Positions 20,181 through 63,624 of a DNA stretch of 64,000 bases are shown here, piece after piece; the first letter of the stretch is position 1; each line of letters begins with the position of its first letter. Source of the DNA: Octopus sinensis (lineage: Eukaryota); the NCBI RefSeq assembly GCF_006345805.1, contig NC_043009.1, positions 67,456,001 to 67,520,000 on the forward strand, in the 5' to 3' direction. A model generated the notes under the pieces. It did not search any database. It was not told the DNA's origin and saw only the letters and a list, made by a program, of their open reading frames with translations. Made by a program: the position numbers and the translations under genes.

Positions 20181-20544
20181 AAGATTGTTTGCCAACATAA
20201 CATGGCAGTCCTGGTTTAGGACTAATGTTGTTATAATTTAGCCCCAGGAGACCTCTTCTCCAGCTTGCTATATGACACAATCTGTGTCCTTACATTTTCA
20301 AACAAAGGAATCTAGCACCCCCACTCAGCTCAAAACAATATCTGTGAATCACGATTTCCAGGTTATTTCTCTTCATCAGCACAGAATAATTGTTCAGACT
20401 GCCATGTTATGTTGGTGACCAATCTTTACTACAAAGTACTGTTGCTGAATATCTCACGTTGTGAGATTAAAAATTAAAAAATTGTAATTTTCTCAGTCAT
20501 TTTATGTCTGATTCACTCCAGCTATCTCTTTCTTCATTTTTCAG

Positions 20545-20619
20545 CTGGTTGTTCCCAAAACGGCTTCCGATGAGTATTTGCGTCATGTTGCTGGATTCCG
20601 TAGCAGAGGACGTCTTCCA
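20545..20619 (+). CDS. MTMR2: MTMR2 exon (LVVPKTASDEYLRHVAGFRSRGRLP)
   Basis: tttcag acceptor, CCA|gtaagt donor, 75 bp. Contains the FRSRGRxP motif. Confidence 0.95.
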
Positions 20620-20806
20620 GTAAGTGTTTTTAAAAATTTTTATTCTGTTTTGTTATTTTGTTTCTTCGAACAAATCACCATATTTACAAGAATATGACTT
20701 ATAGTATAGTACTTATTCTATCGGTCTCTCTTGCTAAGTTACATGGACGTAAACCCACCAGCATCGGTTGTCAAGCAATGTTGCTGGGACAAACAGAGGC
20801 ACACAA

Positions 20807-20840
<34 letters not shown>

Positions 20841-20897
20841 TTTGGATTAACTGGTGCTAGAGTGAGCAATATAGTGACCACTCTCTTATATTTATTT

Positions 20898-20935
<38 letters not shown>

Positions 20936-21296
20936 CATACATACACGACAAGCTTCTTTCAGTTTCCGCCTACCAAATCCACTCACAAGGCTTTGGTCGG
21001 CCTGAGGCTATAGTAGAAGACATTTGCCCAAGGTGCCATAATTTTTAAACATAGATTGTACCATATGGGTGCATAAAATCATTTTAAGTGAGGTATGTTT
21101 GGGAATAAATTGCAATAATATAATAGGGTATGTTCTTACCTCAAAAGGGGTTGATTATTGTCTGAGGGGTGTTGTTAAAATGAGGGTTACTAGGAGAACA
21201 AGGGACTCTATCTTCCATATTAAGGTTCATCATCATCATCATCATCTACTTGATAGTTTATCCTTACCTATTCAGAGTATTTTTTTTTTTCAACAG

Positions 21297-21485
21297 GTGA
21301 TGTCATGGATCCACCCAGAGTCGCAGGCGACCATCACTCGTTCCAGCCAACCTTTGGTCGGAGTCACTGGCAAGCGGAACAAAGAAGATGAACAATACAT
21401 TCAGATGATTATGGATGCCAACGCCCAGTCGCACAAACTGTTCATCATGGATGCTCGACCCAGTGCAAATGCCATGGCCAACAAG
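21297..21485 (+). CDS. MTMR2: MTMR2 exon ([22 protein letters not shown]...[12 protein letters not shown])
   Basis: caacag acceptor, AAG|gtcact donor, 189 bp. Strong myotubularin similarity. Confidence 0.96.
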
Positions 21486-22327
21486 GTCACTGACTCTTCT
21501 TTACACATTCACACTCATTCTAGCCTTATCTCTTTCTCTCTTCCTCTCTTCTCTTTCCTCTTTCTCTTCCCTCTTTCTCTTCTCTTTTCTCTTTCTCTTC
21601 CCTCTTTCTCTTCTCTTTTCTTTTTCTCTCTTTCCTCTTTCTCTCTCCTCTTTTCCTCTTTCTCTTTCCTCTTCTTCTCTCTTCTCTTTTCTCTTTCCCT
21701 CTTCTTCTCTCTTCTCTTTTCTCTTCCCTCTTCCCTTTCTCTCGTTTCTCTTTTATTCCCTCTTTTTGCTTCCCCCCTTGTTGTTGTTGTTATGCTCATT
21801 TACAACTACCAAACAATGTCAAGACAAGGAGACACACACGCACACATAATCTAGCTGTAGAAACCATTCCAAAGCTAACATGTGTAGCCCAGCAGCTTGC
21901 AGGATTTCGGGTAAATCATCCAACCCATGACAGCATGGAAAACTGGTATTAAATGAGATAATGATGATATTTATATGTGTGTATGTATGTATATATATAT
22001 ATATATATTTGAAAAAACGAATAGAGATGGCTTTTGGGGGGATAATTTTTATTTTAATGATAATGTTTACAGTTACTCTAATGAGTTTCAAGCTTTTCGA
22101 TAGCCGTTTTCAAACTGAAATTCTGTGGTTTAGAAGACTGTGTATATAGCAACAGACATTTTTCTTACAAGTATACAAATAAAAAGTAAAAATAGGAAAC
22201 AAAAGATAGAAAAATAAGTAAAGTAATATATTTTATTTTTTATATTGGTTTTTTTTGCCAGATGGCAAAGAAAACTGGGAAAGTAGTTAATGGTCACAAT
22301 AATCCTGTCTTTTATGGTATTTTTCAG

Positions 22328-22419
22328 GCTAAAGGAGGGGGATATGAGAACGAGGATGCTTATCACAATGCTGAGCTGATTTTCTTTGATATTCCTAACA
22401 TCCATGTGATGAGAGAGAG
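22328..22419 (+). CDS. MTMR2: MTMR2 exon ([31 protein letters not shown])
   Basis: tttcag acceptor, AG|gtaaat donor, 92 bp. Contains GGGYE and NIHVMRES motifs. Confidence 0.96.
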
Positions 22420-23570
22420 GTAAATATGACTTGTTTTTTTTTTTTTACTTTCCATACGTGCACCCATATTCACACATTATAACACAGACAGACACACAAG
22501 CCCAATAATACACATATTTGCCCTCCTCCCACTGTCCACTTGCTCCAGATCTTAACACTGTCTTCCAAACATCAACACCTTTTGGATATCTTGCAGAATG
22601 ACACACAATGGTTTTTTTTTACGGTATACAAGTCAAATTTTTTCGATGAAAATTTTCAGCCAAACAGTAGGTCAGTTGACTTATAAATAAACCAAGACAA
22701 TTTTGGAGGACCAAAAAGTCTATGTGAACTACTGTAGGATTTGGAAAGACAACAATAATGTTTGGATGTTTACACATGTATCAGGACAATTACCTTTCTA
22801 GAACAATTCCCCCTGATGACAACTACCCCCCTAGGACAATTATCCCCCTTGGTTAATTACTCCCTCTCTAATATATTAAAAAGTTTTAAATCATCATCTG
22901 TTGTCCTTGAGGTGGGGTGGGGTATTGTCCATGGGGTGGTGAAGTAAATATCCTAGACTCATTTACACATTTACACAATATATACAGTAGTGGCTGTGTG
23001 GTAAGTAGCTTGCTAACCAACCACATGGTTCCGGGTTCAGTCCCACTGCGTGGCATCTTGGGCAAGTGTCTTCTGCTATAGCCCCGGGCCGACCAATGCC
23101 TTGTGAGTGGATTTGGTAGACGGAAACTGAAAGAAGCCTGTTGTATATATGTGTGTGTGTGTGTTTGTGTGTCTGTGTTTGTCCCCCTAGCATTGCTTGA
23201 CAACTGATGCTGGTGTGTTTACGTCCCCGTTACTTAGCGGTTTGGCAAAAGAGACCGATAGAATAAGTACTGGGCTTACAAAAGAATAAGTCCCGGGGTT
23301 GAGTTGCTCAATTAAAAGGCGGTGCTCCAGCATGGCCGCAGTCAAATGACTGAAACAGGTAAAAGAGTAAAAGAGTATATGATATGTTGGCTTGTATGCC
23401 ATAAAATATATTATACCACAATGTCCACAGTACTATGGTCAACCCTCAACATGTTACAGAGGGGCCAGCTGCTTATGTCCGGTCATCACACAACACTCGT
23501 TATTGTAATGTCTACAAAACCGATTGCTTGATTTGAAGATAAACCTTCTGTTTCTCTTTCTTTTTTTCAG

Positions 23571-23664
23571 TTTAAGAAAGTTAAAAGATGTCTGTTTCCC
23601 CAACATCAATGAGACTCATTGGTTGTCCAATATTGAGTCAACACGTTGGCTGGATCACATCAAG
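23571..23664 (+). CDS. MTMR2: MTMR2 exon ([31 protein letters not shown])
   Basis: tttcag acceptor, AAG|gtgagc donor, 94 bp. Completes the split Ser codon from the previous exon. Confidence 0.96.
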
Positions 23665-24787
23665 GTGAGCGAACAAACAGATTCCAAGTTCAAATTTCAC
23701 CATATGTCATTGTAACAATGTTTTTTTTTCTCTTTTAATCTCATGTGGAGGTTCATCATATTACTAATTACCAAAATGAAAAAACTAAGATGTAAGATAG
23801 CAAGTCAAGCAACTTTATGTGGTTCTCTCATGTGGTCTTTGTTTTCTGACAGCAACACCTGAAACGACACAAGTGCGAAATGCTATCAGCCTCAGCCAGT
23901 GGCATGAAGTGTGGAGACTTGCCTGCATTGACCAACTGCTGGTCTCCCTAGAAAAAATTAAAATTTTTGCTCAAGTCTGCACATATATGCACAGTCAACA
24001 TTGACCAATGGAGGTCCTACATAGTCACTCAGAAAGTGATAAATACATAACTTATGTCAGTGAGCCTGTTGTATTTGCTTTATCTCAATTTGGTTCTTAT
24101 AATTATCTGCTATCACCTGGATTTGTTTGTTATCAGTTTGTTAGAGTCTCTCTCCAAGTCTAGCGACTTCTTCTCTGCATGGAGAGGTCATAGCTCCTGT
24201 ACTATAAGACACGTGATTAGAATGTCACAGGAAAGAATTGCAAGACAGATTCTTCAAGAAAAGCTGACAGGCTGGAGACACTTGGGGCAGACCAAGAATC
24301 AGATGGTTGGATAATATTCATTGTCTCAGTTGGTAGAATTTGGGAATCCATCCGGGAAGTGTAAAGATGGTTTCTTCTGATGGAGTCCTGCAGAAAAGGT
24401 GCATGAAGACTCTACCCTGACAAATCCTCTCAGGAAGAGCAGCCAGAAAAGATGGATGAGTGCAGTTTGTCTGTGTCAGCTGGGTTTCTTGGATGCTTTT
24501 CCTTCTGTATTATGAGCTTGTGGTCATACAGAAACAAATTATTATCTGACACATTCAGAAATTGGATGTTAATTTGATTGAAAAAAAACCCAAACAAACA
24601 AAGAATTCATATTGATTATCTGTATAGATTGTTGTGCAGCCTTCTGGCTTGTCACTCATCAGTTCAACTCCTCCAACCCATGCCAGCATGGAAAGCGAAT
24701 GTGAAACGATAATGATAATGATGATGATGATTGTTATTCAAACGATCAAATCCCTGTTATTATTTTTTTCTTCTTCTTGGATTCCAG

Positions 24788-24886
24788 CAAATTTTAGCCG
24801 GCGCTGTTCGTATTGCTGACAAAGTGGAATATTACAAGACGTCTGTGTTGGTTCATTGCAGCGATGGTTGGGACCGAACTGCTCAG
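24788..24886 (+). CDS. MTMR2: MTMR2 catalytic exon ([33 protein letters not shown])
   Basis: ttccag acceptor, CAG|gtaatt donor, 99 bp. Intact CX5R active site HCSDGWDRT. Confidence 0.98.
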
Positions 24887-25075
24887 GTAATTTATAAATA
24901 ATTATTTGTGAATTTATATTTTCAGTTGGTTGTTGTTGTTGTTGTTGTTGTTTTAGTCTAGTCCAGCCCTGACCAAGCAGACTTACAATCAAAGGTTACA
25001 CGGTTGTTCATTTCTGTGATTTCCAGGAATAGTAAAAGACTACGTCATCTAACGTTTTCTTTCAGTGAAGGCGTG

Positions 25076-25390
25076 TGGCTTAGTGGTCAGGGTATCAGGA
25101 TCACGATTTTAAGGTCATGAGTTCAATTCCTGGCAGTTTGTTGTGTCCTTGAGCAAGACACTTTATTTCACATTGCTCCAGTTCACACAACTTGCAGAAA
25201 TGAGTGGGACTTATATTCCAAGGGGCCAACCTTGTAACATTGTGTGTCACTCTGAATCTCCCTGAGAACTACATTAAAGGTACGTGTGTGTGTGGAGTGC
25301 TCAGCCACTTGCAGGTTAATTTCTTGAGGAGTCTGTTCCATTGATCGGATCAACTGGAACCCTCGTCATCATAACCAATGGAGTGCCAGT
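25076..25390 (+). mobile_element. tRNA-headed SINE family C; reverse copy at about 1267-1571
   Basis: TGGCTTAGTGG A box, GAGTTCAATTCC B box and GTCCTTGAGCAAGACACT core. The two copies are clearly homologous. Confidence 0.75.
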
Positions 25391-26028
25391 TAATGCTTTC
25401 TTCCTTTTTTTTTTTTTCTAAGAGATTTGGTTCTTATGTTTAGCTGATCAAGAAATTAATAGAGGTACCTAATGTTGGTGTTGGGAAGCCCCAGTCTTTG
25501 AATCGATCTATAGTAGAGATGACCAGTCAAAGCGAGTCCTAGAACTATGCAAGAGGCAATTATCTCTATATATATAAAAGGCAAAATGTCTGTGTGTGTG
25601 TGTGTGTGTGCGTGCGTGTTCTTTATACAAATCCACAATTTTTCAGTTAGAGGGCTCGCACTTTCTATGGTCATTCAAAGCCGTCCAAGTGTGGTCGTGC
25701 ACATCTTTACATTTCCCCAGTCACCCCACAGAGCCATTAAAAAATCAATAGAAGTGACTTTTTTGTGAATTTTCTATCCAAAACCCAATCAAAATGCCCG
25801 AAACTTGATACGCCAATTGAATGCCAGCTAGCCGTATGTGATTGGTTGGAGATTTTGGACAGTACTCACGTGTATGTGCACACACACGCAGCTGTATATG
25901 CATGCACTAGCACCATGACCCGGCAACGCCAGGTCATAGTGCTAGTGTTGTTTATTTGATTCTTACCATAATGTTTCTAATTGTTTGATATTCCTGAGAT
26001 TTTCAATTTCTCTCTCTCTAATCCACAG

Positions 26029-26136
26029 CTCACCTCTCTTGCAATGATTATGCTGGATCCGTACTACCGAACTGTGAAGGGGTTTGAACTCCTGATAGAA
26101 AAAGAGTGGCTCAGTTTTGGACATAAATTTGCTCAA
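26029..26136 (+). CDS. MTMR2: MTMR2 exon ([36 protein letters not shown])
   Basis: ccacag acceptor, CAA|gtaagt donor, 108 bp. Confidence 0.97.
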
Positions 26137-27352
26137 GTAAGTGGAGACAAGATATTTGGTGACATATATCAAAATTAACTTCTTTACTTTTAATTACCAG
26201 AAAATATTATTGCTGAGAACCATTTTGTTTTGCAGCTGAAGTCTATAATTTTTTTTCTTTTTTTTTTATTGCCCACAAGGGACTAAACATAGAGGGGACA
26301 AACAAGGACAGACTAAGGGATTAAGTTGATTACATCGACCCCAGTGCGTAACTGGTACTTAATTTATTGACCCCGAAAGGATGAAAGGCAAAGTTGACCT
26401 TGGTGGAATTTGAACTCAGAACGTAGAGACAGACGAAATATCAATAAGCATTTCGCCCAGCATGCTAATGTTTCTGCCAGCTCGCCACCTTTGAAGCCTG
26501 TATAATGGTAACCTGAAGTTTGCAGGGAATTTTAAAATTGAATGAAATAGTGAAATATTACTCAGACACGTAGATATTTCTATGAAGAAAGTATCAAGTT
26601 CTTTGAAGAAAATCAGGCCAAAATCTTGAACATTTATGAAGCTGTTTCATTGTATTTAGATCTCCATTTTTACAACTTCCACATCAAGTTCAGATTTATA
26701 TTTGTGTTATTTTATATCAGTCTTGATAGGGAACACCCAGTTAAATGTATTTTATATTCAAACCCAGTATATCTTGGATTACATTATCAATGTGTTCTTT
26801 TCTTTTAACTCAAAAGAAAGTAATTTGGAGCACTTTTAGCTGCTATTTCTTGTATGCTGAGAATCACCATGTATGCGTCCTTGTTGTGTCCTCATTAAGT
26901 ACTGTATAAATGTAGTTGCCTGCGTATAACTTAAAAAAGGTTCGTACATAAAATTATAATCGGGTGTTCTAGTTTGACCATTTAGCAGTTAATCTAGTCT
27001 AAATATTCTGCCTGTTTTATGTTAAAACAGACCATATCCAACTTCTCACACCTACCCAACAATGTCAATCTAAAAATAAACAATCACATCATCAAAATCT
27101 CAAAGACATGAGATAATCCCTGATTAATTCCAAACAATGTGAATAAACTAGGAATACATTCAACAGAGTTACCTGAAAGCTGAAGGGTTAAACACGGCCG
27201 ATTAGAGAATGGCTTGATTTGTGTCATAGAAGCAGGTGGGGTCTTAGATATGTTGTTATGAAACAATTTAGTCTGGTTTAAGATTGAGTTAAAGTTTTAA
27301 TCAAATACACATCGTTGTAGGCTGAATTCCAATTTCAATTTTTTTCTTGCAG

Positions 27353-27445
27353 AGAATCGGGCATGGTGAAGACAAACACTCAGATGCTGACCGTTCTCCT
27401 GTATTTTTGCAGTTTATTGACTGTGTGTGGCAAATGGCCAATCAG
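27353..27445 (+). CDS. MTMR2: MTMR2 exon, SID region ([31 protein letters not shown])
   Basis: ttgcag acceptor, CAG|gtaatt donor, 93 bp. Confidence 0.97.
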
Positions 27446-28632
27446 GTAATTAATCTTAAAATCTGGACAATGGACAGGAGTACAGTAATAAGAACAATAA
27501 TAAATGATTGAAGAACAAATATATGGTGCATGTGTTTATTTGGCAAAAAAACCCAAAAAGAAAAAAAAATATTACCATTCTGAAATATAACAAAATCTTA
27601 AAATCACTGTTCTTTAATTAATGATGTAATACAAAGAACATTAGAGTGAAATGGTTATCGGTAATCACCTTCACTAATTAGGTTTGAGGGTGATTTGATC
27701 ATCATATTGTGACTTAAAGGGATGATAAAATACTGTACAGATTACAAGATTAAATGTATTGAGACTTGGAGAACTGATTAAAACTGATGGACTGGGGTTG
27801 ACTCCTTGTTACCTTTTTTAGTTCTGTGGCAGAAGTGCAGCTCAGCACTGAAGACTAACAAATATAAAACCCATGCTGTAGGTTCCCAAAGTACTTGTCT
27901 ACAGCCAAATAGACTGAGCTTTTATCGGCCCGGGGCTATAGCATAAGACACTTGCCCAAGATGCCACACTGTGGGACTGAACCACTGCGTGGCATCTTGG
28001 GCAAGTGTCTTCTGCTATAGCCCTGGGCCGACCAAAGCCTTGTGAGTGGATTTGGTAGACGGAAACTGAAAGAAGCCTGTCGTATATATGTATATATATG
28101 TATGTGTGTGTGTGTATATGTTTGTGTGCCTGTGTTTGTCCCCCTAGCATTGCTTGACAACCGATGCTGGTGTGTTTACGTCCCCGTCACTTAGCGGTTC
28201 GGCAAAAGAGACCGATAGAATAAGTACTGGGCTTACAAAGAATAAGTCCCGGGGTCGATTTGCTCGACTAAAGGCGGTGCTCCAGCATGGCTGCAGTCAA
28301 ATGACTGAAACAAGTAAAAGAGTATATATATATATATATATGTAGCTGTAGAAACCATGCCAAAGCAGACATTGTATTGATGCTCCAATGTCTGCTTTGG
28401 CATGGTTTCTACAGCTACGTGCCCTTATATATATATATATCATCATCATCATCATCATGGACGCTAAACGATGACGATGATGATGATGATGATATATATA
28501 TATATAAGGGCACGTAGCTGTAGAAACCATGTCAAAGCAGACATTGGAGCATCAATACAGGTGTCAGATCTTTCAGATTCTGTAAAACCATCCAACTCAT
28601 GCCAATAGAGAAGATGGATCTTAACAGATGAA

Positions 28633-28673
<41 letters not shown>

Positions 28674-28955
28674 TTTATTTGTGTGTGTGTCTGTGTGTGT
28701 GTGGTCCTCTGGTCACATGGCTGGTGTAAAGTATCTCTGTAAGCATTCTAGCATCAGGGAATTGATTGTAATGTCTTTATGTAGCACGTAAATAAGCACC
28801 AATTACTCTCATGGAAGGGCATCCGGCCATAGGAACCTTGCTAAACCAAACAGGTTACCGGTTTTCAGCCAAACCATCTAACCCATGCCAGCATGGAAAG
28901 CAGACGTTAAACGACGATGACGACCATTAATGCTTCTTTTTTTGTTTGATTTCAG

Positions 28956-29069
28956 TTTCCAATTGCTTTTGAATTCAACGAATACTTCTTGATTACCATC
29001 ATGGACCATCTGTATTCCTGCCTCTTTGGAACATTCTTGTACAATTCGGAACAACAACGAGTCAAAGAG
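28956..29069 (+). CDS. MTMR2: MTMR2 exon ([38 protein letters not shown])
   Basis: tttcag acceptor, GAG|gtacag donor, 114 bp. Confidence 0.97.
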
Positions 29070-29384
29070 GTACAGCATTCAGTTAGAATTTCTCCCTGAA
29101 CACCTCCCACCCCAACCCCCACCCTCCAACCTATTCCATTAATTTCCCATCTGTTGCTTTCTCGTTTTCTTTATCACTCTCTCATCTAAAACTCCCAGAC
29201 TCTCATCATATCATTCACCACTCTACTCTCGCTCTGTCTGCTTCTTTTGACGATGCCTGAAGCCAGCTCAACCCACCCCGGGTGGATGCTGTCTCAAGTC
29301 AAGTCAAGTCTCTGTTATAAGCGATGGAAAAGCATTCAATCTGTCTGTATTCCATTACTGTTTCTTTATTGCTAGCCATCACTC

Positions 29385-29990
29385 TTTCTCTCTCTCTCTC
29401 CCTTCCTTGATCTCTCTCCTTTCTCTCCCTTTATCTCTCTCCTTTCTCTCCCCTCTCCCTCCACCCCCTCTGCCTCTATTTCATTACCCCCTCTCTCTCT
29501 CTCCCTTCCTTTATCTCTCTCTCCTTTCTCTCCCTTTATCTCTCTCCTTTCTCTCCCCTCTCCCTCCACCCCTCTGCCTCTATTTCATTACCCCCTCTCT
29601 CTCTTTCCCTTCCTTTATCTCTCTCTCCCTTCCTTTCTCTCTCTCCTTTCTCTCCCTTCTCCCTCCACCCCTCTGCCTCTATTTCATTACCCCCTCTCTC
29701 TCTCCCTTCCTTTATCTCTCTCTCCCTTCCTTTATCTCTCTCTCTCCTTTCTCTCTCTCCTTTCTCTCCCCTCTCCCTCCACCCCTCTGCCTCTATTTCA
29801 TTACCCCCTCTCTCTCTCCCTTCCTTTATCTCTCTCCTTTCTCTCTCTCCTTTCTCTCCCTTTATCTCTCTCCTTTCTCTCTCTCCTTTCTCTCTCTCCT
29901 TTCTCTCTCTCCTTTCTCTCTCTCCTTTCTCTCCCCTCTCCCTCCACCCCCTGCCTCTATTTCATTACCCCCTCTCTCTCCCTCCCTCTC
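29385..29990. repeat. Polypyrimidine compound repeat with five copies of CCACCCC(T)CTGCCTCTATTTCATTACCCC
   Basis: Seen directly. Confidence 0.9.
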
Positions 29991-30123
29991 TCTGATTGCT
30001 CTGTCTTGCTGACAGTTTCTCTGGAAATATTCAAAGAACACAGATTTATAGAATTCCATGTTTACACTTGTCTCCTCACTCGCTGATCCCCTCTAATCTT
30101 CTCATTCTATTTATTGTATTAAG

Positions 30124-30303
30124 GAACTGAAGACAAAGACCCATTCCCTGTGGGGTTACATCAACAGCAGCGTGGAGGATTATCTTAATCCTCTCTATGC
30201 CACTTACCTAGACCAACATGTCTTACTACCAGTTGCAAGTATGAGGCAGTTAGAACTTTGGATTGGATATTACTGCCGATGGAACCCATGCCTAAGGCCA
30301 CAG
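30124..30303 (+). CDS. MTMR2: MTMR2 exon ([16 protein letters not shown]...[11 protein letters not shown])
   Basis: attaag acceptor, CAG|gtaatt donor, 180 bp. Confidence 0.95.
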
Positions 30304-30606
30304 GTAATTGTTTTGTTCTTCTTCTTAATATTCTTGGAGTTCTTTCGTAAATCTGTTTACCATTTTTTGGTGTGTGTGGATACTCTTTTACTCTTTTACT
30401 CTTCTACTTGTTTCAGTCATTTGACTGAGGCCATGCTGGAGCACCACCTTTAGTTGAGCATATCGACCCCGGGACTTATTCTTTGTAAGCCCAGTACTTA
30501 TTCTATCGGTCTCTTTTTGCCAAACCGCTAAGTGACGGGGACGTAAACACACCAGCATCGGTTGTCAAGCAATGCTAGGAGAACAAACGCAGACACACAC
30601 ACACAT

Positions 30607-42470: not shown

Positions 42471-44062
42471 TAACCCTCCATAGGGATCTTAGAGGTAACC
42501 ATCATTAAACTGGATTTCCAAACATGACCAGCTGAGACTATATCCAATCATGTAGTTCTGATCTACCCCCAAGTCGCCTGCTAATAGTTTCAGCTTGAAG
42601 AATATGTCTTCCCAGGGACATTCTACTCATTTCCATAGTACTGGAGACGTGGCCTCCCAAAGCAGGTAAGTAGCTGCTTAACCTCCAGATTCTTTGATCT
42701 GAGTTATGCGCCCCTTTTGAGTAATGGAAGGGCCCCATTTCAGTCATATCTTTATCTGTCTGTCTGTCTATCTATCTATCTAATCATATATATATCATCA
42801 CTTAACGTCTGCTTTCCATGCTAGCATGGGTTGGACGATTTGATTTAGAACTGGCAAACCAGATGGCTGCACCCGGCTAAAAGCAACATTGAAGGAAGGT
42901 CACTTCACTACCATTTAATTAATGCATCTTGAGGTAACACGTTGCTGGGATTCATGATAATGGTGGCACTACATGACTTGTTTCAAGCTATCTTCAAAGC
43001 TGAGCTGTTTCACATAATTTATCCTGCAACATGTGAACATTTCTCTTTGACCTAATGGAACTGCATTACTCTAGACCAGCAGTTCTCAGCTAGAGATAGA
43101 GAGAGAGAGAGAGACTGGGAATACTGTATAGATGGTAGATGGCAGACTTTACCAAACTTCCAGATTCCAATGGCAACAATTTTATTAACTCTTCCGTGCA
43201 AAGGGTCCCTGAATAAGGTTTAAGGATGTTGAATGAAACACCCATGTCTCCAGATGTAAATTATTCTGCTCACAGACCTTACCAATCCCACCCCCTTACC
43301 ATATGGCCCTTAGAAGTCCGTATAAAATTTATTTCCAATAAATTGGCTGCACTTATACAATACAAACATTTTTATTCAATCCTAAATAGTATTTAATTAT
43401 AAAAAAATGTATTTTTTAAATGTGATTTGCTAGTCAACATTTTTAGTTATGATAAATTACTGCTGTCACGTTGCATCTGTGTATTCTGGCAGCATTAGAA
43501 CAGTCCACCATATTGGCATTTTTCTTGGTGATTCTTCATCCTTGGTTGTCACTAGTATTTCTTGATATTTATTTCTGAAACAAGACTATTTCCATCTACA
43601 TTATATACCTGCTCAGGACTTTTTCAACTGCTTCCATATCTTCTGAACATTTTTCACCTTACACTGACATATTGAGCTGCAGCCAACCCTCACTGTAAAC
43701 ACTAAATTTTGTCCTTATTCTTTAACAAAATTTTTGGGTATCACCTTCACTTGATATATAAAAACCACTTCAGGACATGATCCTAATTAGAACTTATTTC
43801 TGTCATTTTTGCTTCATGAAAAAAGCAAACAATTTTTTTTCTATTGGAAAGTCATTGCTGTATGAATCCCTGCTGTCAAGTTCAATTTCTACCTTTAAAA
43901 GGACAATGCCTGGGGTCTGATTGTTTATTCTTTCACGCCAAGGCTGGAGCTTTAAGCACATGTTTATAAAAAACACCGCCAAAAAACAAAACCAATTTGG
44001 AATGCCTTCGCTGTGTTTAGATCGATGCAGGATTACTAATGGACAAGTTAAGAGAGGATGAT

Positions 44063-44683
44063 CTAGGAATTAAAAGAGAAGTAACAAAAAGATCAAGAAA
44101 ATAACAGGAAATTGGTTTGTGTGGTTTTTTTTATATTTGTATATTTGTCAATAACGAAAAGGGTGTCGAAATTTAGACGGCTGTTTTTCACCAATTCACT
44201 GTTCATCTTTACTCTACGAACTTTTTTTCATCACAGTAATAGTGGCCGCTGGGTTTGGACATGGACAATGGTGATCACAGCAACCATGACAATTTGGAGC
44301 ATGACAATTTGAGCAAGGATTGCAGGGGCACGGATGACATATTGGTGTCACGTGGATTTGAGGTTCTGGTGCTAAGAATCAAAAGAGAAGCAACAAAAAG
44401 ATCAAGAAAAAATAACAGAAAATTGGTTTGTGTTTTTTTGTGTTATATTTGCATATTTGTCAATAACGAAAAGGGTGTCGAAATTTAGACAGCTGTTTTT
44501 CACCAATTCACTGTTCATCTTTACTCTACGAACCTTTTTTCGTCACAGTAATAGTGGCCGCTGGGTTTGGACATGGACAATGGTGATCACAGCAACCATG
44601 ACAATTTGGAGCATGACAATTTGAGCAAGGATTGCAGGGGCACGAATGGCATATTGGTGTCACGTGGATATGAGGTTCTGGTG
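44063..44683. repeat. Tandem duplication, two ~310-bp units (44063-44371 and 44372-44683)
   Basis: High identity along the whole unit by eye. Confidence 0.95.
44222..44371 (-). CDS. Cys-rich exon-like unit B (xPEPQIHVTPICHPCPCNPCSNCHAPNCHGCCDHHCPCPNPAATITVMKK)
   Basis: Acceptor tcttttgattcttag, phase 1, which fits the donor phase of unit A. All 10 Cys retained. Weaker AAA|gttcgt donor or TAG at 44214. Confidence 0.6.
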
Positions 44684-44687
44684 GATT
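44534..44687 (-). CDS. Cys-rich exon-like unit A (NPPEPHIHVTPICHSCPCNPCSNCHAPNCHGCCDHHCPCPNPAATITVTKK)
   Basis: Strong acceptor ttttttctttttttgttcttttctcag, open frame with 10 Cys, AAG|gttcgt donor (or reads on to TAG at 44526). Not in the ORF track because it has no ATG. Confidence 0.65.
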
Positions 44688-45311
44688 CTGAGAAAAGAAC
44701 AAAAAAAGAAAAAATTAGAAAATTCTCTTATAAGGTTGTCTCAAAAGTTCGTAGAAAGTCTTTGAAAATAATGGTCTTTATTTTGAGGAATAATTTTTGT
44801 TGTTTTTGTTAGTACTTGGCGTGTAAAAATTTAATTTTCGCAAGTGTTTACGAACTTTTGGGACAACCTAATATTAATGAATAATTTGCGCAGCAAAATT
44901 TCGTCATTAAGTAGAAATTAGAAATCAAGTTAAGGGGAATAACTCTCAGATAAGGGAGAGAACCCATAGATATTACGTCACGAAATTTTTTTAAATGTGT
45001 TTTGTAAGTAATTAAGCATCTTCATCCTCTTAACACATTTTCCTCGCTAATATAGTTGGGGAAATATTCAAAACCCGAGCAAGATTATGAATTATACCAA
45101 AGTGATTCAGTAATAATTCAGATTCACGTTTAATCCACACTACACAGCTTCAACAAGCAAATTTGCTATTCAACTGTATTTTTGATAGAAAAAAAAAGAA
45201 GAAATATACAAAGAATGAAAAAACAGTTACCTGGGTAACAGTAATTTTCGTTCGTTTTCTTTTTGGAGCTGCAAAAATAATAAGAATAATTATAATACCC
45301 AGCAAAATAAG

Positions 45312-45347
<36 letters not shown>

Positions 45348-47872
45348 GTACTACTTACTACTACTACTACTACTAATAATAATAATACTCCTTTCTACTA
45401 TAGGCACAAGGCCACAAGGAAGGAGTAAGTCTAGATTACCCCAGTACACAGCTGGTACTTAACTCCAAAAGGATGAAAGGCAACGTCAACCTTAGCGGGA
45501 TTTAATTTCAACTTTTGGCCCATGGCCTGCAATTTCGGTGGGTGGTTAAGTAAGTTGATCACATCGACCACAGGGCTCAACAGGCACCCATTTTATCAAT
45601 CTCGAAAGTTCACCTCGGCAACATTTTTTTCGTGTGTTATGGTTTCAAGTTTTGGAACAAGGCCGGCAACTCATTTGATCGACTCCCAAAAGAATGAAAT
45701 GCAGAGTTAACCTTTGCAGAATTTGAACTCAGAATGGATTGCCAGAAGAAATGCATCTTACCATTTCATCTTGGGCACTAAAGATTCTGCCGGTTCCCTG
45801 CCATCATATTAATGGTTTCAAAATTTGGAACAAGGCCTGCAGTTAGGACGAAAGGCAAAGTCGACCTCGGTAGAATTTGAACACAAAACACAAATACAGA
45901 CGAAATACCGCTAAGCATTTCGCATGCTAACGATTCTGCCAGCTTGCTGTCCTTGCAAAGCAGCCTATTCTATGCTGTTGTCCCTAGTATTTAACTGGTA
46001 CTTTACTTTATCAACCCTGGAGATATGAACGAGGCCTTCCAATGTTCTGTTGCAAGAGGATCAGAACCCTTAACTGTTCTGGACTGTCAAGGGGAATCAC
46101 ACCTTCACGAAGTATGAAAAAAGGGTCCAAAACCTTACAAAAGACTGTTGAATATAGAAAATGTGTAAGGTTTAAGAATAATTATCCTTTCTAGTATCTT
46201 TAACTCGAGACACAGGTGTCTTGGTAAATGTTTTCCTGTTGATTTAAATTGATGGGTGCATGTAGAAAACAAAGGATAAAGTGCCTAAAATTACTTTATT
46301 ATGTAAAAACATATGACAACTTGTGAACAGTACAATACATCTACCACAATAAGAAAACCTAAAAAAAATATATGTAAAGTATGTTTGTGAAAAAATAAGA
46401 AGCAAACTATGTACTGAGAGACGATCTCTGATTGGCTCTTACACTTCAAAACCAACCATTCACAACATTTATTCCATTGGGCTGATCAATTGGCCCAGTT
46501 ATCCCAATAGGGTCTAATAGAGGATTCAGCTACAGAAGAGGGAGTAGATGGTCTAGGAAGAGGCCAAAGCGAGGGACCCTGTTATGGAAAAACAAACAAT
46601 TTAATGAATTAGTTAAAATGCAGTTTGTACATGTGCCAGGTTGGGGGTAATACTCATGCTTCCCAGAGTGAGTGTCACTGTCTAGCAGTGTCTGCTGTGG
46701 TCTTAGCTAAATCCCATGATCTCTAGTGAAAGTTATGTACATGATGCATATGCTAGGTACAGTGCAAAAGCTATGACAGCGTTGGTAGGGACAGTTGAAT
46801 GTGATGACAAGTGGGTAAGAGAAATGTCTGGAAATATATGTGGATAGAAACTAAAAGAAGATATGGGATGAAAATGGAAGAATAATCTCAATGCTCACAA
46901 AAGATAATATAGGAATGCAACAAAGGAGCGTTACTTCATGGGAACAAGCAAATCTGAAGAATGTGATGTCTTTAAAAAAGAATTTAAGAGAAAAGGTAAT
47001 GTGGAGAAGACAAAGCTTGAATGAGCTGAGAAATAGTTGGAGGTTCAGAAAAGAATAATTTTCTAAGAGAGAAAAGATGGTGGCTAACTGAAAGTTTGTG
47101 ATAAATCTTCTGAACGTTGGAAACCTGATGCAAGGTGGTATGATGGTACTGTAGAGAACCACTAAAACGAAAGGGACAGACTTGAATGAGAAATTAGACG
47201 TCCAATATAATTAGGAAAGTGGAAAGTTAAAAGTAAAGAGCTTTGCCAATCTTTTCAAACATGAGGTATCCTGGATGGGAAGGAGTTTATGAAATGGAAT
47301 AATAATGGTACACTTCTCTTTAATGATGCTAAAAATACAAACGTATGTGCTATAATGAGGACACTGATCAAGAAGAATAATGCATAGTGGTGGAGGTGGT
47401 GGTGGTGATCTACTCAAGACAACAAAGGTAAGAAAGGCATCTGGACTTTCAAGAACGAGCTGTGTGTGTGTGTAAGTATTATTGAAGCTCTGCTATCACA
47501 TAAATGTAAAAGCCACATGTAGTGTTGAGGGTGGTGTGCCACCAGTGGTGGTGGTGAGAAGTCAAGCATGAGGTACCAGAAGGTGGAAGTGACAACATAG
47601 TGATGCAGGTCTTTCAATCAGCCTCTTTCTTGGATGAGCAGTTAATTCCTAAAATGTGTTGGAACTTGGTGGCCCTCTTCATTATTTGCACCACCGAACT
47701 AGGTGAGAAATGTTGTAAACAAATACAAATGAATTTAGAAGTGCAGAAAAGTATTTGCATGCATAACATACATACAACTGCTCACATATATTACAAATAG
47801 AATGCATTATATAAATCAGACCCACCGCCCACCATCACCACCAGGTCACAAATATCACAAGTTGAACATTTA

Positions 47873-48592
47873 TTAACATATATACAGTGACTCACCTGGC
47901 ACTGTTTGAATGGCAAGTTGTGGAGCACACGGGCAGTGGCATAGTTTCACAGTGGCTGGCTCACACTGTTCTAGATCAGATGTTGATGCGTCATTCATAT
48001 CGACTGTGACATTCTCCGGGCAAGGGCAAGGGCATGGACCGCAAGGCCCGCAAGGCCCACAAGGGCCGCAAGGCCCGCAAGGCCCGCAAGGGCCGCAAGG
48101 CCCGCAAGGCGCGCAACACTCCTTGGGCGCTACTTCAATTGAGTAAGTTTCACATGGTTTCGGTATCAGTTGTGATAACATGGTAGCCACCTTCGTTTGC
48201 TCGGCTGCCACCACAGCCTGTTGGGTCGCAACCACAGCCTGTTTAGCAGCTACTTTTGCTTGGTGTTTGGCTATCATAAATTTACAAGGCAGTTTGTGTA
48301 TGCAGACACAATGGTTGTGACAGTGACCGTGACCGTGGCAGTGACCATGACTGAGGCAGTGACCATGACTGAGGCAGTGACCATGAAAATGACAGTGACC
48401 ATGGCCATGGCAGTGACCGTGTCCGTGGCAATGACCGTGTCCGTGGCAATGACCGTGTCCGTGGCAGTGATGACCGTGCCCATGGCAGTGACCATAACCG
48501 TGACAGTGGCCATGATGCCCATGACAGTGATGATGGCATGGCTTATGGGTATGCATAATAATAGAATCACATGTTACAGAATCACAACTCAT
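47873..48592 (-). CDS. Unrecognised His/Cys-rich protein, 239 aa as unspliced ORF: (GHCHGH)-like x11, four heptads, (CGP)8, CPCP; no signal peptide
   Basis: ATG in AAG-ATG context with an in-frame TGA five codons upstream. Pyrimidine-rich acceptor near 48662. Repeat units vary mainly at synonymous positions. Possible CAG|GTGAGT donor after 47896, so the C-terminus is uncertain. Confidence 0.8.
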
Positions 48593-49652
48593 CTTTCTGC
48601 TAGTTCATGCAAAACGTCAAAATAGATAGATATTTTCTCCTGCAGGTTGACACAAATCTGCTGGTAAAAAAAAAGAAGAAAAAAAAGAAAAGAAAAATGT
48701 TAGAGTACATACAAAAATGTTAAGAGTACATACATTGTATACATACATTGTATACATGCATGTATGCATACACATAGCTTTATGCAAACCAATCACAAAA
48801 ATAAAGTTCTTTTATATACGTCAAAAAAAAAAAATTTAATCTGTGAATGTGTGTGTGCATATATATATATCATCATCATCATCGTTTTAATGTCCGCTTT
48901 CCATGCTGGCATGGGTTGGACGATTTGACCGAGGACTGGCAAGCCAGATGGCTGCACCAGGCTTATATTGTTTTATATATGGTTATGCCTGCACCCAAGT
49001 TGAGGAATGTATATCATGTATTGCGTTTAGTTGAATTGGCATCATCTTCATTGTTGCCTTCGCTTTGTTTTGGCTGTTGTCCGCTCCAGCCTTCTTCAGG
49101 TGCCTTGTGCTAAACTCAGTTCTATCTGAATTTCGAACCTGACCCTTTTTGATCTCCCGGGTTATGTTATTCTCAAGAGAGTTGGAATGAAAGCAGTGAT
49201 CCTTCTGAAGGTCAAATAAAAGATTAGGTTTGAAATTCGTTTACAGCTGAGTTCAACACAAGACACCTGAAGACGGCTGGAGTGTACAAAAGCCAAAACA
49301 GTGAAAAGCAACAAAATGAAGACACCATACATAACACAATTGTGTTTAAAAAGAAATTTAAATGGACAATATTTTGTTTACAAGATTTTTCTTCTGTACA
49401 TGTTTACATTTGCATGTACGCATCATTGTTCTAATGTCGAATTTTTCAAGCTTACATGAGTTAAACAAAATTTGTTGAGGTGGAATACCCTTCCTGTGAA
49501 ACAACTCACTTCAAGTAAAGGGTAAGATTTCTTGAAGAATACACATGCTTTCATGGAAGATTGGAAACAAAAGTACAGTTCAGGTAGAGAGAAAATAGAA
49601 AGATATAGTGCTGTGGGAGAGGATAACGGGGAGAAAGGGAGAGAGAGAGAGA

Positions 49653-49707
<55 letters not shown>

Positions 49708-50454
49708 GGAATTACTGTATAGATGGCAGACTTTACCAAACTTCCAGATTCCAATGGCAACAATTTTATTAACTCTTCCGCTCAAAGGGTCCTGAATAAG
49801 GTTTAAGGATGTTGAATGAAACACCCATGTCTCCAGATGTAAATTATTCTGCTCACAGACCATTCATCCATCCCTTCATGATGAGGATCCAAAGCAAGGG
49901 ACCTTGTCAAGGGCCTCTTCCTGTTTAGCAAATGTTAGATATAAAGGTTGTCTTCAAGTTAGCTACCGCCAACCCCTGCCCGATTAGTTGTCTCCCTTGG
50001 AAACTAGCATCAGTGGTACCGCTTTACCGCTCCCAGGCTCAAAGTTGAACTGCATCTCATTCAGGTTAATTCTGCTTATCTACTCTTAAGACTGTCTGTG
50101 TCTGTGTATGTCTCTCTCTCTCTTTTCTCTCTCTTCTCTCTCTCTTACTGGTGAAGGCCGTTTTATAGGGTTACTTTGGGTTTCTCGCTATAAAGGATAC
50201 CTTTATGGCGTATCTTCAGGCCATGAAACCTGTTGGCATATGATCTCTTTAAAAATGGAGGGGGAAATGATACGGATGTAATCAAGGGGATTATGTGTAT
50301 ATATATAATAGTGAGGGAGCAGAGAGAAGGGGAAGAGGGAAGAAGAAAGAAGAGGGAAGAAGGGAAAGAAGGGAAGAGGAGGGAAAGAGAGTAGGGGTGA
50401 AAAGATGAAGGACTGAAGAGAAGTAGGAGTCGGGGGGATGTTAGATGAAAAGCA

Positions 50455-52581: not shown

Positions 52582-58620
<6,039 letters not shown>

Positions 58621-61958: not shown

Positions 61959-63624
61959 CCGCGAGAATTGGGATGCGGGACGAGCGTGTCTGCATACGCG
62001 GACGACGTCACCGTCATAGTGTCTAGCCACGAGCACATCGAGCTGGTCGGCGAGACACTGAAAAACTACGAAGCGGTGACAGGAGCGAAAATCAACCGGG
62101 AAAAGTCAGTGGGCTTGCGACTAGGCACCTGGAGAAGCAAGCCCATGCCGTCCACCAGCGCCTCCGTCGTGGGACGCTGGACCGACGGCCCGGTTGAGTT
62201 GCTCGGGGTCTGGTTTGGTCCGGACCTCCAAGTGGAGAAGAACTGGAACGAGATAACGAGTAGGGTGGTCACTCTCGCCCGGCAATGGGCCGAGAGGAAA
62301 CTGTCCCTAAAAGGTCGAGCGGAGGTGGCGAACACGTACATCGCGTCCGTCATCTACTACCGCCTGACCGTCGTACCTTGTCCCGACCCTACCATCACCA
62401 AACTACAACGCATCCTCTTTCGCTTCTTGTGGAAAGGATGCGTCCCGATGGTCAGGCGATCATTTGCTGTCAACACACCGTTAAAAGGAGGGCTGGGCAT
62501 GCCGTGGTTGATGATGCGCAGACACGCGCTGAGACTGCGACATCTCTGGCTCTATGTAGACGACGGTGAACAGGTGTGGTCGCCGTTTGTGAGGCACGCT
62601 TTCCCGCAGCTCGTCTCCATGACCGAACTGCAGTCGTGGATCAAAAAGAGGCCGAGGAAGGGCGAATGGCACCGCGAGTGTCGCGTTGCTCTCAAGCAAC
62701 TCTGCCGTCCTGGGTCGACCTTAAGTGACTTCAACACAACCAAAGCATTCTATAGGGGTTTAGTGGAGGGGAGGTACGACGACGAGCTCGGGGCGAACCT
62801 GGACGTCGACGAGGAGTACCTGACCCGCCTGTTCGGGACGACTTTCGGGCCAGGGCCCATGGACAACTTCCAGAGATCCCTGGCCTGGGCCCATGGACAA
62901 CTTCCAGAGATCCCTGGCCTGGCAGTGCTACCGAGAAGCGCTACCCGTTCGGGATAAGCTCTACAGACACGGCTCGAGAAACACGGGGCCGACCTGCCCG
63001 AGATGCGGTCAGAGCGACGAAACCGTTCTGCACGCACTCGTTCAGTGTCCAACAATTTCCGACCTGTGGGCTTATGTCGAACAACTGCTGTCACGTGTGG
63101 GACGAGTCGGTTTATCAGCTGAGTCTATCGTCAATATTGTCACGCCTCCTTCCTTCAAACGGGAAGGAAGAGCTATTTTCATCATCCTTGTGGCTATGGC
63201 GAAAGAATGTATCTGGTGGACGCGTCTGAAAGGATTGGAGACAAACACTTTCCTCTCTGGTCAATCTCTCATCAACTTCTTCAAGTACCACTTGAAAAGG
63301 AAAGTGAGAGTAGAGAGGCAAGTTTTGTCTAGCGAATGTTTTAAAAAAAGATGGGTGAATGTAGCAAGAATGGCACGTATGAATGACGAAGCCACCTTGA
63401 GCATAGTCCTATGAACCCAGAAATCGAAAACAGAGAGTTGCTTATTTGCAAAAAAAAAAAAAAAAAAAAAAAAAGAAATATAAAATGTGACTTCATTGAC
63501 CGAGGTTACCGTGGTCTTTTCCGCAGGCTTTTCTTTCCACGGGTAAACCTCACCTGTCCTCCCCTTTACACTTCACATTGACATTTCTGTGATAACGATC
63601 CCTATTGATCTTTTTTTTTCCTCT

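What the first reader, a model, noticed from the sequence alone, without database searches (positions are those of the whole stretch)
47873..48592. Orphan modular His/Cys protein: (GHCHGH)-like x11, heptads and (CGP)8
Seen: a 239-aa minus-strand ORF with an upstream in-frame stop, an upstream splice acceptor, about 11 hexapeptides GHC(H/L)xH, eight CGP triplets (48035-48106) and a CPCPCP tail. Repeat units differ mostly at third codon positions (GGG/GGC/GGT, TGC/TGT, CAT/CAC), which suggests selection on protein. There is no hydrophobic signal peptide. Established: CGP repeats define the Drosophila Mst87F/Mst84D sperm-tail proteins, and CxP repeats occur in mammalian ODF1 outer dense fibre protein; squid His-rich beak proteins are secreted and differ. 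Inference: an intracellular Zn-binding or disulphide-crosslinked structural protein, possibly a cephalopod sperm accessory-fibre component, or a new metal-sequestering protein.
Basis: partly seen in the sequence, partly recalled or inferred. Interest (0 to 1): 0.82.

Follow-up and report, generated by a model that had tools for sequence, protein, structure and literature searches.

The report
Putative His/Cys-rich repeat protein gene
This stretch of an animal genome very probably holds a real, spliced gene for an intracellular protein made of histidine/cysteine, alanine-heptad and Cys-Gly-Pro repeats, most likely a metal-binding, disulphide-crosslinkable structural protein, but no relative or transcript could be found, so its proposed sperm-tail role is still a guess.

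Summary
The 239-aa minus-strand ORF has 11 GHC(H/L)xH units, four 21-nt heptads, eight CGP triplets at exactly 48035-48106, a CPCPCP tail, an upstream in-frame TGA, a strong acceptor and no hydrophobic segment. Intrinsic evidence favours a real coding exon. All arrays have periods divisible by three. Only frame -0 makes most between-unit changes synonymous. The non-repeat codons show coding-type 3-periodicity (P=0.004). The ORF is therefore probably exon 1 of a protein of about 282-332 aa. There is no match to Pfam (including the Drosophila CGP family, HSP20/ODF1 and metallothioneins), to PDB sequences, or to 1.84 billion representative proteins beyond single-module low-complexity hits. The collections hold no close relative of this genome, so 'orphan' is untestable, and so are the cephalopod origin and the tissue of expression. 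Best reading: an intracellular Zn/thiol-rich, helix-oligomerised, disulphide-crosslinkable protein, analogous but not homologous to Mst(3)CGP and ODF1. The sperm role is inference only.

The parts
48661..48697 (-). 32-nt polypyrimidine tract plus ACCAG acceptor (AG at 48662-48661). It implies an upstream non-coding 5' exon that was not located.
   Evidence: Sequence. TRF poly-A on the + strand at 48666-48697.
47896..48660 (-). Proposed exon 1 (765 nt): a 68-nt 5'UTR part, the ATG at 48592-48590, 232 codons and the first base of a split codon (phase 1).
   Evidence: Coding-type 3-periodicity of its non-repeat codons: chi2 21.4, empirical P 0.004.
48605..48607 (-). In-frame TGA upstream of the ATG. 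It excludes an N-terminal extension, and hence a signal peptide, supplied through this acceptor.
48311..48535 (-). His/Cys array (aa 20-94): 11 in-register 18-nt units GHC(H/L)xH plus a degenerate HHHCHGHH lead-in. About 3 His and 1 Cys per unit.
   Evidence: syn:nonsyn 12:6 only in frame -0.
48170..48286 (-). Ala/Val-rich helix (aa 103-141) containing four 21-nt heptads at 48179-48262. It is the only confidently predicted structural element.
   Evidence: heptads. (AlphaFold2 helix 103-141, pLDDT 80-90).
48032..48112 (-). Nine 9-nt (A/G)PC units, which equal eight CGP triplets at 48035-48106.
48017..48034 (-). CPCPCP hexapeptide (6-nt period).
47890..47898 (-). Donor CAG|GTGAGT, last exon base 47896, phase 1. 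It is the only 9/9 consensus donor on this strand between 48600 and 43800.
47873..47895 (-). Read-through tail of the ORF (..GESLYIC*). It is probably intronic.
44534..44677 (-). Cassette exon A (144 nt, phase 1-1 if the second AG at 44679-44678 is used). It encodes EPHIHVTPICHSCPCNPCSNCHAPNCHGCCDHHCPCPNPAATITVTKK. The donor is AAG|GTTCGT. The first AG (exon start 44687) would shift the frame.
44222..44371 (-). Cassette exon B (150 nt, phase 1-1 with its first AG). It encodes APEPQIHVTPICHPCPCNPCSNCHAPNCHGCCDHHCPCPNPAATITVMKK. The stop TAG at 44216-44214 applies if the weak donor AAA|GTTCGT is not used.
44063..44724 (-). 312-bp tandem duplication of an 'exon + 165-nt intron' cassette (96% identity over 247 nt).

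Best explanation
This is a real, spliced, protein-coding animal gene on the minus strand. Exon 1 (48660-47896) carries the start codon and 232 codons. It is spliced in phase 1 to one or both of two duplicated Cys/His/Pro-rich cassette exons (44677-44534 and 44371-44222), giving a cytosolic protein of about 282-332 aa with no signal peptide or membrane segment. The protein is modular. (i) An N-terminal array of about 11 GHCHGH units offers about 3 imidazoles and 1 thiolate per unit. This is inferred to chelate Zn(II), or Cu(I)/Ni(II)/Cd(II), within or between chains. (ii) A 39-residue Ala/Val heptad helix is inferred to drive self-association. (iii) (CGP)8, CPCPCP and the Cys-rich cassettes (10 Cys per 48 residues) are inferred to form intermolecular disulphides. 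The proposed mechanism is as follows. The protein assembles through the helix into a matrix whose thiols are first held by metal and then oxidised into an insoluble crosslinked material, as described for mammalian outer dense fibres. The tissue most consistent with that design is the male germ line (sperm-tail accessory material). Shown: the sequence anatomy, the coding signatures, the splice compatibility and the absence of family membership. Inferred: metal binding, oligomerisation, crosslinking and any tissue of expression. My sub-estimates are about 0.7 for a real coding gene, about 0.8 for metal binding and disulphide chemistry if it is expressed, and about 0.25-0.3 for a sperm-tail location.
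For: The ORF and its modules are. All four tandem arrays have periods of 18, 21, 9 and 6 nt, and the only length variant is a 3-nt insertion. Only frame -0 makes most between-unit changes synonymous in all three arrays, at 12:6, 5:1 and 9:8. The other five frames have 7-26 stops, and P(no stop) is about 0.0015 for the 134 unique codons. 3-periodicity of the unique codons gives chi2 21.4 (P=0.004), equal to the LINE reverse-transcriptase ORF controls. A strong acceptor and a unique 9/9 donor flank the exon. Across the whole 64-kb window, the only other stop-free Cys/His/Pro-rich stretches are the two cassettes. They lie on the same strand 3.2-3.6 kb downstream, have acceptor and donor sites, are symmetric in phase 1-1, and continue the frame from exon 1. 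Dispersed-repeat fragments fill the gap between them, as expected of an intron. There is no hydrophobic segment. A confident helix spans residues 103-141. For the analogues, Cys/Pro-rich ODF1 with zinc and disulphides is described in PMC8471410, and the Mst(3)CGP sperm proteins in PMC10645079.
Against: There is no transcript, proteomic or comparative evidence of any kind. Tandem repeats stay open in several frames by themselves. The first AG upstream of cassette A would give a frameshift, so the in-frame model needs the second AG 10 nt downstream or skipping to cassette B. The cassette donors are weak, at 7/9 and 6/9. No 5' exon or promoter was located. The proximal TATA-like box would give a 5'UTR with about eight upstream ATGs. 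AlphaFold2 confidence is below 50 outside the helix. The sperm assignment rests on an analogy with proteins to which no homology could be shown.
Confidence: 0.45

Rival explanations
1. It is not a functional gene. A cluster of minisatellites happens to be open in one frame, or it is a very young de novo ORF that is transcribed little or not at all and has no selected function.
For: Repeat arrays are open in 3-4 of the six frames. The window has 96 stop-free runs of 100 codons or more, mostly microsatellite translations. There is no homolog, gene model or transcript anywhere. The His/Cys units are not independent, so the third-position statistic is inflated.
Against: Four separate arrays all have periods divisible by three. 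Synonymous bias occurs only in frame -0. The 134 unique codons are stop-free (P about 0.0015) and 3-periodic (P=0.004). Consensus splice sites sit exactly at the ORF's edges, and phase-compatible cassettes of the same rare composition lie downstream.
Confidence: 0.25
2. It is a somatic metal-buffering or detoxifying protein, a functional analogue of metallothionein (for example in digestive gland or kidney). It would sequester Zn, Cu or Cd through the His/Cys array and Cys-rich tail and would have no structural role.
For: The protein is 33% His plus Cys, with repeated HxH, CxH, CxC and CC motifs and no signal peptide. Single-module matches are to His-rich metal-binding loops of transporters and the like.
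Against: There is no hit to any metallothionein profile. The protein is 4-5 times longer than metallothioneins, has only 15% Cys, and is rich in His, Pro and Gly. The heptad helix and the CGP/CPC modules are features of self-assembling, crosslinked proteins and not of soluble chelators. This last point is an inference.
Confidence: 0.15
3. It is a secreted structural biomaterial protein, like the beak, jaw, sucker or egg-case His-rich proteins.
For: Gly/His-rich repeats are typical of metal-hardened invertebrate biomaterials. Squid histidine-rich beak proteins are an example (PMC9068888).
Against: There is no signal peptide or hydrophobic segment. The in-frame TGA between the acceptor and the ATG rules out an N-terminal extension from an upstream exon. 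Those proteins are Cys-poor. According to PMC9068888, histidine-rich beak proteins were found only in decapodiforms.
Confidence: 0.05
4. The coding strand is +, and the CGP array is a collagen-like (GPQ)8 exon (ORF 47910-48146).
For: In the + QGP frame the CGP-array variation is also mostly synonymous, at 4:1. There are weak Collagen profile hits.
Against: The + ORF is only 78 aa. It is not in frame with any other module. The + frames of the His and heptad arrays are non-synonymous or closed by stops. The Collagen score of 13.4 bits is well below the 27.2 gathering score, and that score came from the minus-frame peptide.
Confidence: 0.02

Closest known systems
Drosophila Mst(3)CGP family (Mst87F, Mst84Da-d; Pfam 'MSSP', name and accession recalled from memory)
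   Same: Both have tandem Cys-Gly-Pro repeats, lack a signal peptide and are Cys/Pro/Gly-rich low-complexity proteins. The Drosophila proteins are male-germline specific and needed for normal axoneme and sperm-tail structure (PMC10645079).
   Different: There is no profile match even at E<=10. The fly proteins are small (from memory about 55-70 aa) and consist almost entirely of CGP repeats. Here CGP is only 24 of 239-332 residues, alongside a His/Cys array, a heptad helix and Cys-rich cassettes. The family's 5'UTR translational control element (consensus recalled from memory) is absent from the proximal 5' region.
Mammalian ODF1/HSPB10 (outer dense fibre protein 1)
   Same: Both have C-terminal C-x-P/CGP-type repeats and a high Cys and Pro content. 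ODF1 is associated with zinc and disulphide stabilisation of an insoluble intracellular sperm-tail structure (PMC8471410).
   Different: ODF1 is a small heat-shock protein family member. No HSP20/alpha-crystallin domain is detected here. ODF1 has no His/Cys hexapeptide array.
His-rich metal-binding segments (ZIP/ZnT transporter loops, bacterial Hpn-type Ni/Zn storage proteins, Gly/His-rich jaw and beak proteins)
   Same: All have runs of HxH / GH motifs. The best matches to the His module are such segments.
   Different: Those are Cys-poor (or, for Hpn, lack the regular hexapeptide; from memory). They are loops of membrane proteins or secreted proteins. None combines the His array with heptads and CGP repeats. 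Squid histidine-rich beak proteins are secreted, expressed in the buccal mass and restricted to decapodiforms (PMC9068888).
Metallothioneins
   Same: Both are intracellular, Cys-rich, metal-thiolate chemistry is plausible for both, and both contain CxC and CC motifs.
   Different: There is no metallothionein profile hit. Here Cys is 15% and His 18%, against about 30% Cys and almost no His in classical metallothioneins (established knowledge). This protein is 4-5 times longer and contains a long helix.
Keratin-associated proteins / SMCP (Cys/Pro-rich crosslinking matrix proteins)
   Same: Both are intracellular low-complexity Cys/Pro/Gly repeat proteins that work by disulphide crosslinking (established knowledge).
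   Different: There is no sequence-family match. The His array and heptad helix have no counterpart in those proteins.

Membership tests
Mst(3)CGP / Pfam MSSP (Drosophila male-specific sperm proteins) | Tandem Cys-Gly-Pro repeats | tested here: met
   Eight CGP triplets at 48035-48106.
Mst(3)CGP / Pfam MSSP (Drosophila male-specific sperm proteins) | Significant match to the family profile | tested here: not met
   The Pfam-A scan at E<=10 returned no family for the ORF, the spliced model or the CGP-containing fragment, apart from a sub-threshold Collagen hit.
Mst(3)CGP / Pfam MSSP (Drosophila male-specific sperm proteins) | 12-nt translational control element in the 5'UTR (consensus recalled from memory) | tested here: not met
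   There is no match within 5 kb upstream. The one exact match, at 53963-53974 (-), lies in CA/TA simple sequence, and 7 of 100 shuffles give at least one match. The test is weak, because the element is known only from Drosophila.
Mst(3)CGP / Pfam MSSP (Drosophila male-specific sperm proteins) | Male-germline-specific transcription; protein in the sperm tail | not testable with these tools
   No expression data are available.
ODF1/HSPB10 | HSP20/alpha-crystallin domain | tested here: not met
   No Pfam hit.
ODF1/HSPB10 | C-terminal C-x-P repeats | tested here: met
   (A/G)PC x9, CPCPCP, and CPCNPC / CPCPNP in the cassettes.
ODF1/HSPB10 | Localisation in outer dense fibres; zinc- and disulphide-dependent insolubility | not testable with these tools
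   Needs fractionation or immunolocalisation.
Metallothionein | Match to a metallothionein profile; about 30% Cys, few or no His or aromatic residues; 60-75 aa | tested here: not met
   No Pfam hit. The ORF has 15% Cys, 18% His and 239 aa or more.
Squid histidine-rich beak proteins / secreted Gly-His biomaterial proteins | N-terminal signal peptide | tested here: not met
   Maximum KD(15) is 1.0 and the N-terminal 30 residues average -0.55. The upstream in-frame TGA blocks any extension.
Collagen-like (+ strand reading) | Collagen triple-helix profile at the gathering score; long uninterrupted G-x-y run in an ORF with exon context | tested here: not met
   The score is 13.4 bits against 27.2. 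The + ORF is only 78 aa and is isolated.

The most novel reading that the evidence does not exclude
This is a lineage-restricted sperm accessory-fibre (or comparable cytoskeletal matrix) protein that evolved independently of ODF1 and Mst(3)CGP. It carries its own built-in 'zinc switch': about eleven His3Cys sites would keep the neighbouring CGP/CPC thiols reduced during assembly, and metal loss would trigger disulphide hardening. That would be a convergent, modular solution to stiffening a flagellum.
Probability: 0.15. Interest if true: 0.7.

Novelty: new variant of a known kind. Interest (0 to 1): 0.42.

Why it matters
If the gene is expressed as modelled, it would be a compact natural design that joins three functions in one chain: a regular His3Cys metal-binding array, an Ala/Val heptad self-association helix, and CGP/CPC disulphide-crosslinking modules. 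It would show that Cys-Gly-Pro repeat proteins, so far tied to sperm tails in flies and mammals, arose independently in another animal lineage. It would also give a tractable model for how zinc loading and thiol oxidation are coupled in insoluble intracellular matrices, and a template for metal-responsive protein materials. If it is not expressed, it is simply an unusually tidy repeat-derived ORF. At present the value is that of a well-defined, cheaply testable candidate, not of a discovery.

Tried and rejected
1. The word-indexed search of 5.8 billion proteins with the whole ORF returned only CGP/CNP low-complexity and wrong-frame hits. With the repeats removed it returned nothing.
2. The exhaustive HMMER search of 1.84 billion representatives had a best hit of 67 bits. 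Every hit covers one low-complexity module, and none shares the architecture.
3. Exact-product look-up found nothing on record.
4. Pfam, NCBIfam and PDB sequence searches gave nothing or noise.
5. Metagenome contig scans with degenerate peptide patterns and with an exact 42-mer found nothing.
6. I tried to identify the organism, or a close relative, through the neighbouring myotubularin exon. The best identity was 84-89%, in ENA metagenome-assembly eukaryote contigs with introns of about 110 nt and in one Logan contig. The collections therefore cannot speak to 'orphan' or 'cephalopod'.
7. Rfam and tRNA scans found nothing.
8. Literature searches for the motifs, for cephalopod testis genes and for sperm proteomes described nothing similar.
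9. I rejected the idea that the 188-bp direct repeats bracketing the locus are LTRs. They are elements of about 170 bp with a (CT)n tail.
10. I rejected the idea that the ORF is nested in an intron of the myotubularin-related gene. That gene's exons run from 19.4 to 30.3 kb on the + strand and nearly reach its C-terminus, so the two genes are tail-to-tail.
11. Homology between the 3' end of exon 1 and the cassettes (HCPC..A..TV) is only suggestive, with E=0.04 for a single comparison.
12. I did not run a fold search on the AlphaFold2 model, because its mean pLDDT of 46 would give meaningless matches.

Full report
**Observation**

The minus-strand ORF 47873-48592 exists and translates to 239 residues, with H42, C37, G28 and P21.

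- **Upstream context.** An in-frame TGA lies 15 nt upstream of the ATG. Fifty-four nucleotides further upstream, a 32-nt polypyrimidine tract ends in ACCAG at 48662-48661.
- **Modules.** Codon by codon the protein contains:
  - eleven in-register 18-nt units encoding GHC(H/L)xH (aa 28-94, with one extra His codon), preceded by a degenerate HHHCHGHH;
  - four 21-nt heptads, [28 protein letters not shown] (48179-48262);
  - CPCPCP (48017-48034);
  - a unique 40-residue tail.
- **No targeting signal.** No stretch is hydrophobic enough for a signal peptide or membrane segment; the maximum KD(15) is 1.0.

**Is it coding or a repeat artefact?**

Tandem repeats stay open in several frames by themselves, and here three or four of the six frames are open across the His array. 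ORF length alone is therefore weak evidence. Five other lines point to coding in frame -0:

1. All four arrays have periods divisible by three (18, 21, 9 and 6 nt), and the only length irregularity is a 3-nt insertion.
2. Differences among units fall at third codon positions: 20 of 29 in the His/Cys units and 5 of 6 in the CGP units. In a six-frame comparison, frame -0 is the only one in which most changed codons are synonymous in all three arrays, at 12:6, 5:1 and 9:8. The collagen-like + frame matches this only for the CGP array and is not contiguous with anything else.
3. The 134 unique codons are stop-free (P about 0.0015 at the local stop-triplet frequency), while the other five frames carry 7-26 stops.
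4. Those unique codons show coding-type base periodicity: chi2 is 21.4 against a null median of 5.7, giving an empirical P of 0.004. The window's reverse-transcriptase ORFs score 21.2 and 41.4.
5. Consensus splice signals sit at the ORF's two edges.

- **Donor.** Seven codons before the stop lies CAG|GTGAGT, with the last exon base at 47896 in phase 1. It is the only 9/9 donor consensus on this strand between 48600 and 43800. The final ..GESLYIC* is therefore probably intronic.
- **Cassettes.** A scan of all six frames of the 64-kb window for stop-free Cys/His/Pro-rich stretches finds only the ORF and two short blocks. Both lie on the same strand, 3.2-3.6 kb downstream. They belong to a 312-bp tandem duplication (96% identity) of an 'exon + 165-nt intron' cassette. 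Each block is preceded by a polypyrimidine tract and AG and followed by GTTCGT.
- **Phase.** Cassette B (44371-44222, 150 nt) is phase 1-1 from its first AG and continues the exon-1 frame. Cassette A is phase 1-1 (44677-44534, 144 nt) only from its second AG. Its first AG, 10 nt upstream, would shift the frame and end in an unrelated 33-residue tail.
- **Models.** In-frame models give 282, 284 or 332 residues ending ..CCDHHCPCPNPAATITV(T/M)KK(G/S)S*, with up to C56 H55 P39 and a pI of about 7.1.
- **Intron.** The space between exon 1 and the cassettes is filled with fragments of dispersed repeats, as expected of an intron.
- **Open points.** No 5' exon or promoter was located. A TATA-like box near 48815 would give a leader with many upstream ATGs. 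Which cassettes are used, and whether a further exon follows (acceptor at 44064-44063), cannot be decided without transcripts.

**Surroundings**

- The window is a repeat-rich animal genome with LINE-type reverse-transcriptase ORFs and abundant microsatellites. It has no Rfam or tRNA hits.
- A myotubularin-related phosphatase gene runs on the + strand, with exons at about 19.4, 21.3, 22.3, 24.86 (CSDGWDR active site), 26.1, 27.4, 28.97 and 30.15-30.3 kb. The last of these is close to the C-terminus.
- The candidate gene therefore lies downstream of it, tail-to-tail, and is probably not nested.
- Two 94%-identical 188-bp direct repeats bracket the locus (43092-43278 and 49682-49861). They are elements of about 170 bp with a (CT)n tail, so they are SINE-like copies and not LTRs.

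**Relatives**

- **Large protein collections.** None could be found. The whole ORF retrieves only CGP/CNP low-complexity or wrong-frame hits, and the repeat-free composite retrieves nothing. An exhaustive HMMER pass over 1.84 billion representatives gives a best score of 67 bits. Every hit covers a single module, and none shares the architecture.
- **Curated libraries.** Pfam (all of life) gives no family for the ORF, the 332-aa model or the cassette. NCBIfam and PDB sequences give noise.
- **Metagenomes.** Two metagenome scans were negative.
- **Caveat.** These negatives say little about orphan status. Even the highly conserved myotubularin exon finds at most 84-89% identity, in exon-sized fragments from ENA metagenome-assembly eukaryote contigs with introns of about 110 nt and from one Logan contig. 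No close relative of this genome is in the collections, and no annotated eukaryotic proteomes seem to be included.

**Mechanism (inferred)**

- **His/Cys array.** Each GHCHGH unit provides three imidazoles and one thiolate in HxH/CxH spacing, which is the ligand set of tetrahedral Zn(II) sites. Eleven units could hold roughly ten to twelve ions, or bridge chains.
- **Helix.** AlphaFold2 without an alignment predicts only one confident element, a helix at 103-141 (pLDDT 80-90) that coincides with the heptads. Ala occupies the positions spaced 3 and 4 apart, with Val alongside, which suits helix-helix packing.
- **Cys/Pro modules.** The CGP, CPC and cassette modules (10 Cys in 48 residues) resemble the Cys/Pro-rich modules of proteins that form insoluble disulphide-crosslinked intracellular matrices.
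- **Analogues.** ODF1 is a Cys/Pro-rich outer-dense-fibre protein. Dense fibres are zinc-rich and disulphide-stabilised (PMC8471410). The Drosophila Mst(3)CGP proteins carry the same Cys-Gly-Pro motif, are male-specific, and their loss disturbs axoneme assembly (PMC10645079).
- **Committed reading.** An intracellular, helix-assembled protein loaded with metal and later disulphide-crosslinked is the mechanism I commit to (0.45 overall). A sperm-tail location is the most consistent but least supported element (about 0.25-0.3).

**Comparison and membership**

- The protein works like Mst(3)CGP, ODF1 and keratin-associated proteins, but it is not a member of any of those families.
- The CGP-repeat feature is met. 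The Pfam profile test, the HSP20 domain test and the test for the fly 5'UTR control element (consensus from memory) are not met.
- Metallothionein membership fails on profile, size and composition.
- Secreted His-rich biomaterial proteins are excluded by the missing signal peptide and the upstream in-frame stop. Squid histidine-rich beak proteins are in any case buccal-mass proteins of decapodiforms (PMC9068888).
- No paper in the library prints these motifs or describes such a protein.

**Verdict**

- The most likely status is a real gene with an unusual modular design: a new variant of the known kind 'low-complexity Cys-rich crosslinking or metal-binding intracellular proteins'.
- Expression, conservation and function are all untested.
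- Interest is moderate (0.42). It would rise substantially with one RNA-seq mapping.

Noticed in passing
window 19400-30330 (+): A myotubularin-related (MTMR1/2-like) phosphatase gene. Recognisable exons lie at about 19.4, 21.3, 22.3, 24.86 (CSDGWDR catalytic motif), 26.1, 27.4, 28.97 and 30.15-30.3 kb, with introns of 1-2.5 kb. It converges tail-to-tail on the candidate gene and would serve as a synteny anchor.
   Followed up: partly
window 43092-43278 and 49682-49861: Two 94%-identical copies of an element of about 170 bp, each ending in a (CT)n tail on the minus strand. They are the only two copies in the window and they bracket the whole candidate gene in its orientation. They look like SINE-type retroposons and not LTRs.
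   Followed up: yes
window 48859-48963: A dispersed element of about 95 bp with more than 20 copies across the window in both orientations. It sits about 200 bp upstream of the exon-1 acceptor. Other dispersed-repeat fragments lie at 45365-45503, 45669-45752 and 45845-45947, inside the putative intron.
   Followed up: partly
window 47910-48146 (+): The reverse strand of the CGP array reads as a collagen-like (GPQ)8 in a 78-aa ORF. This explains why many database 'hits' are collagen-like or wrong-frame translations.
   Followed up: yes
window 43803-44062 (-): After cassette B there is a third acceptor-like site (tcctag| at 44064-44063). It opens an 86-codon frame, phase-compatible with cassette B's weak donor, that is not Cys-rich. 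It could be a further exon or chance. AATAAA signals lie at 43929, 43573 and 43376.
   Followed up: partly
window 53963-53974 (-): An exact match to the Drosophila Mst(3)CGP translational-control-element consensus (recalled from memory), on the gene's strand 5.3 kb upstream. It is embedded in CA/TA simple sequence, and 7 of 100 shuffles give at least one match, so I judge it chance.
   Followed up: yes
window 7523-10106 (-) and 61968-63414 (+): Long LINE-type ORFs (reverse-transcriptase-like, 496+368 aa and 329+173 aa). Together with very abundant (TATG)n, (CA)n and (CT)n microsatellites (for example 33-35 kb and 52.4-52.8 kb), they account for most long stop-free runs in the window.
   Followed up: no
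window 16613-16687 (+): An odd [13 protein letters not shown] stretch within a 98-codon stop-free run, in a region that probably lies inside the myotubularin-related gene. There is no ATG-initiated ORF in that frame.
   Followed up: no
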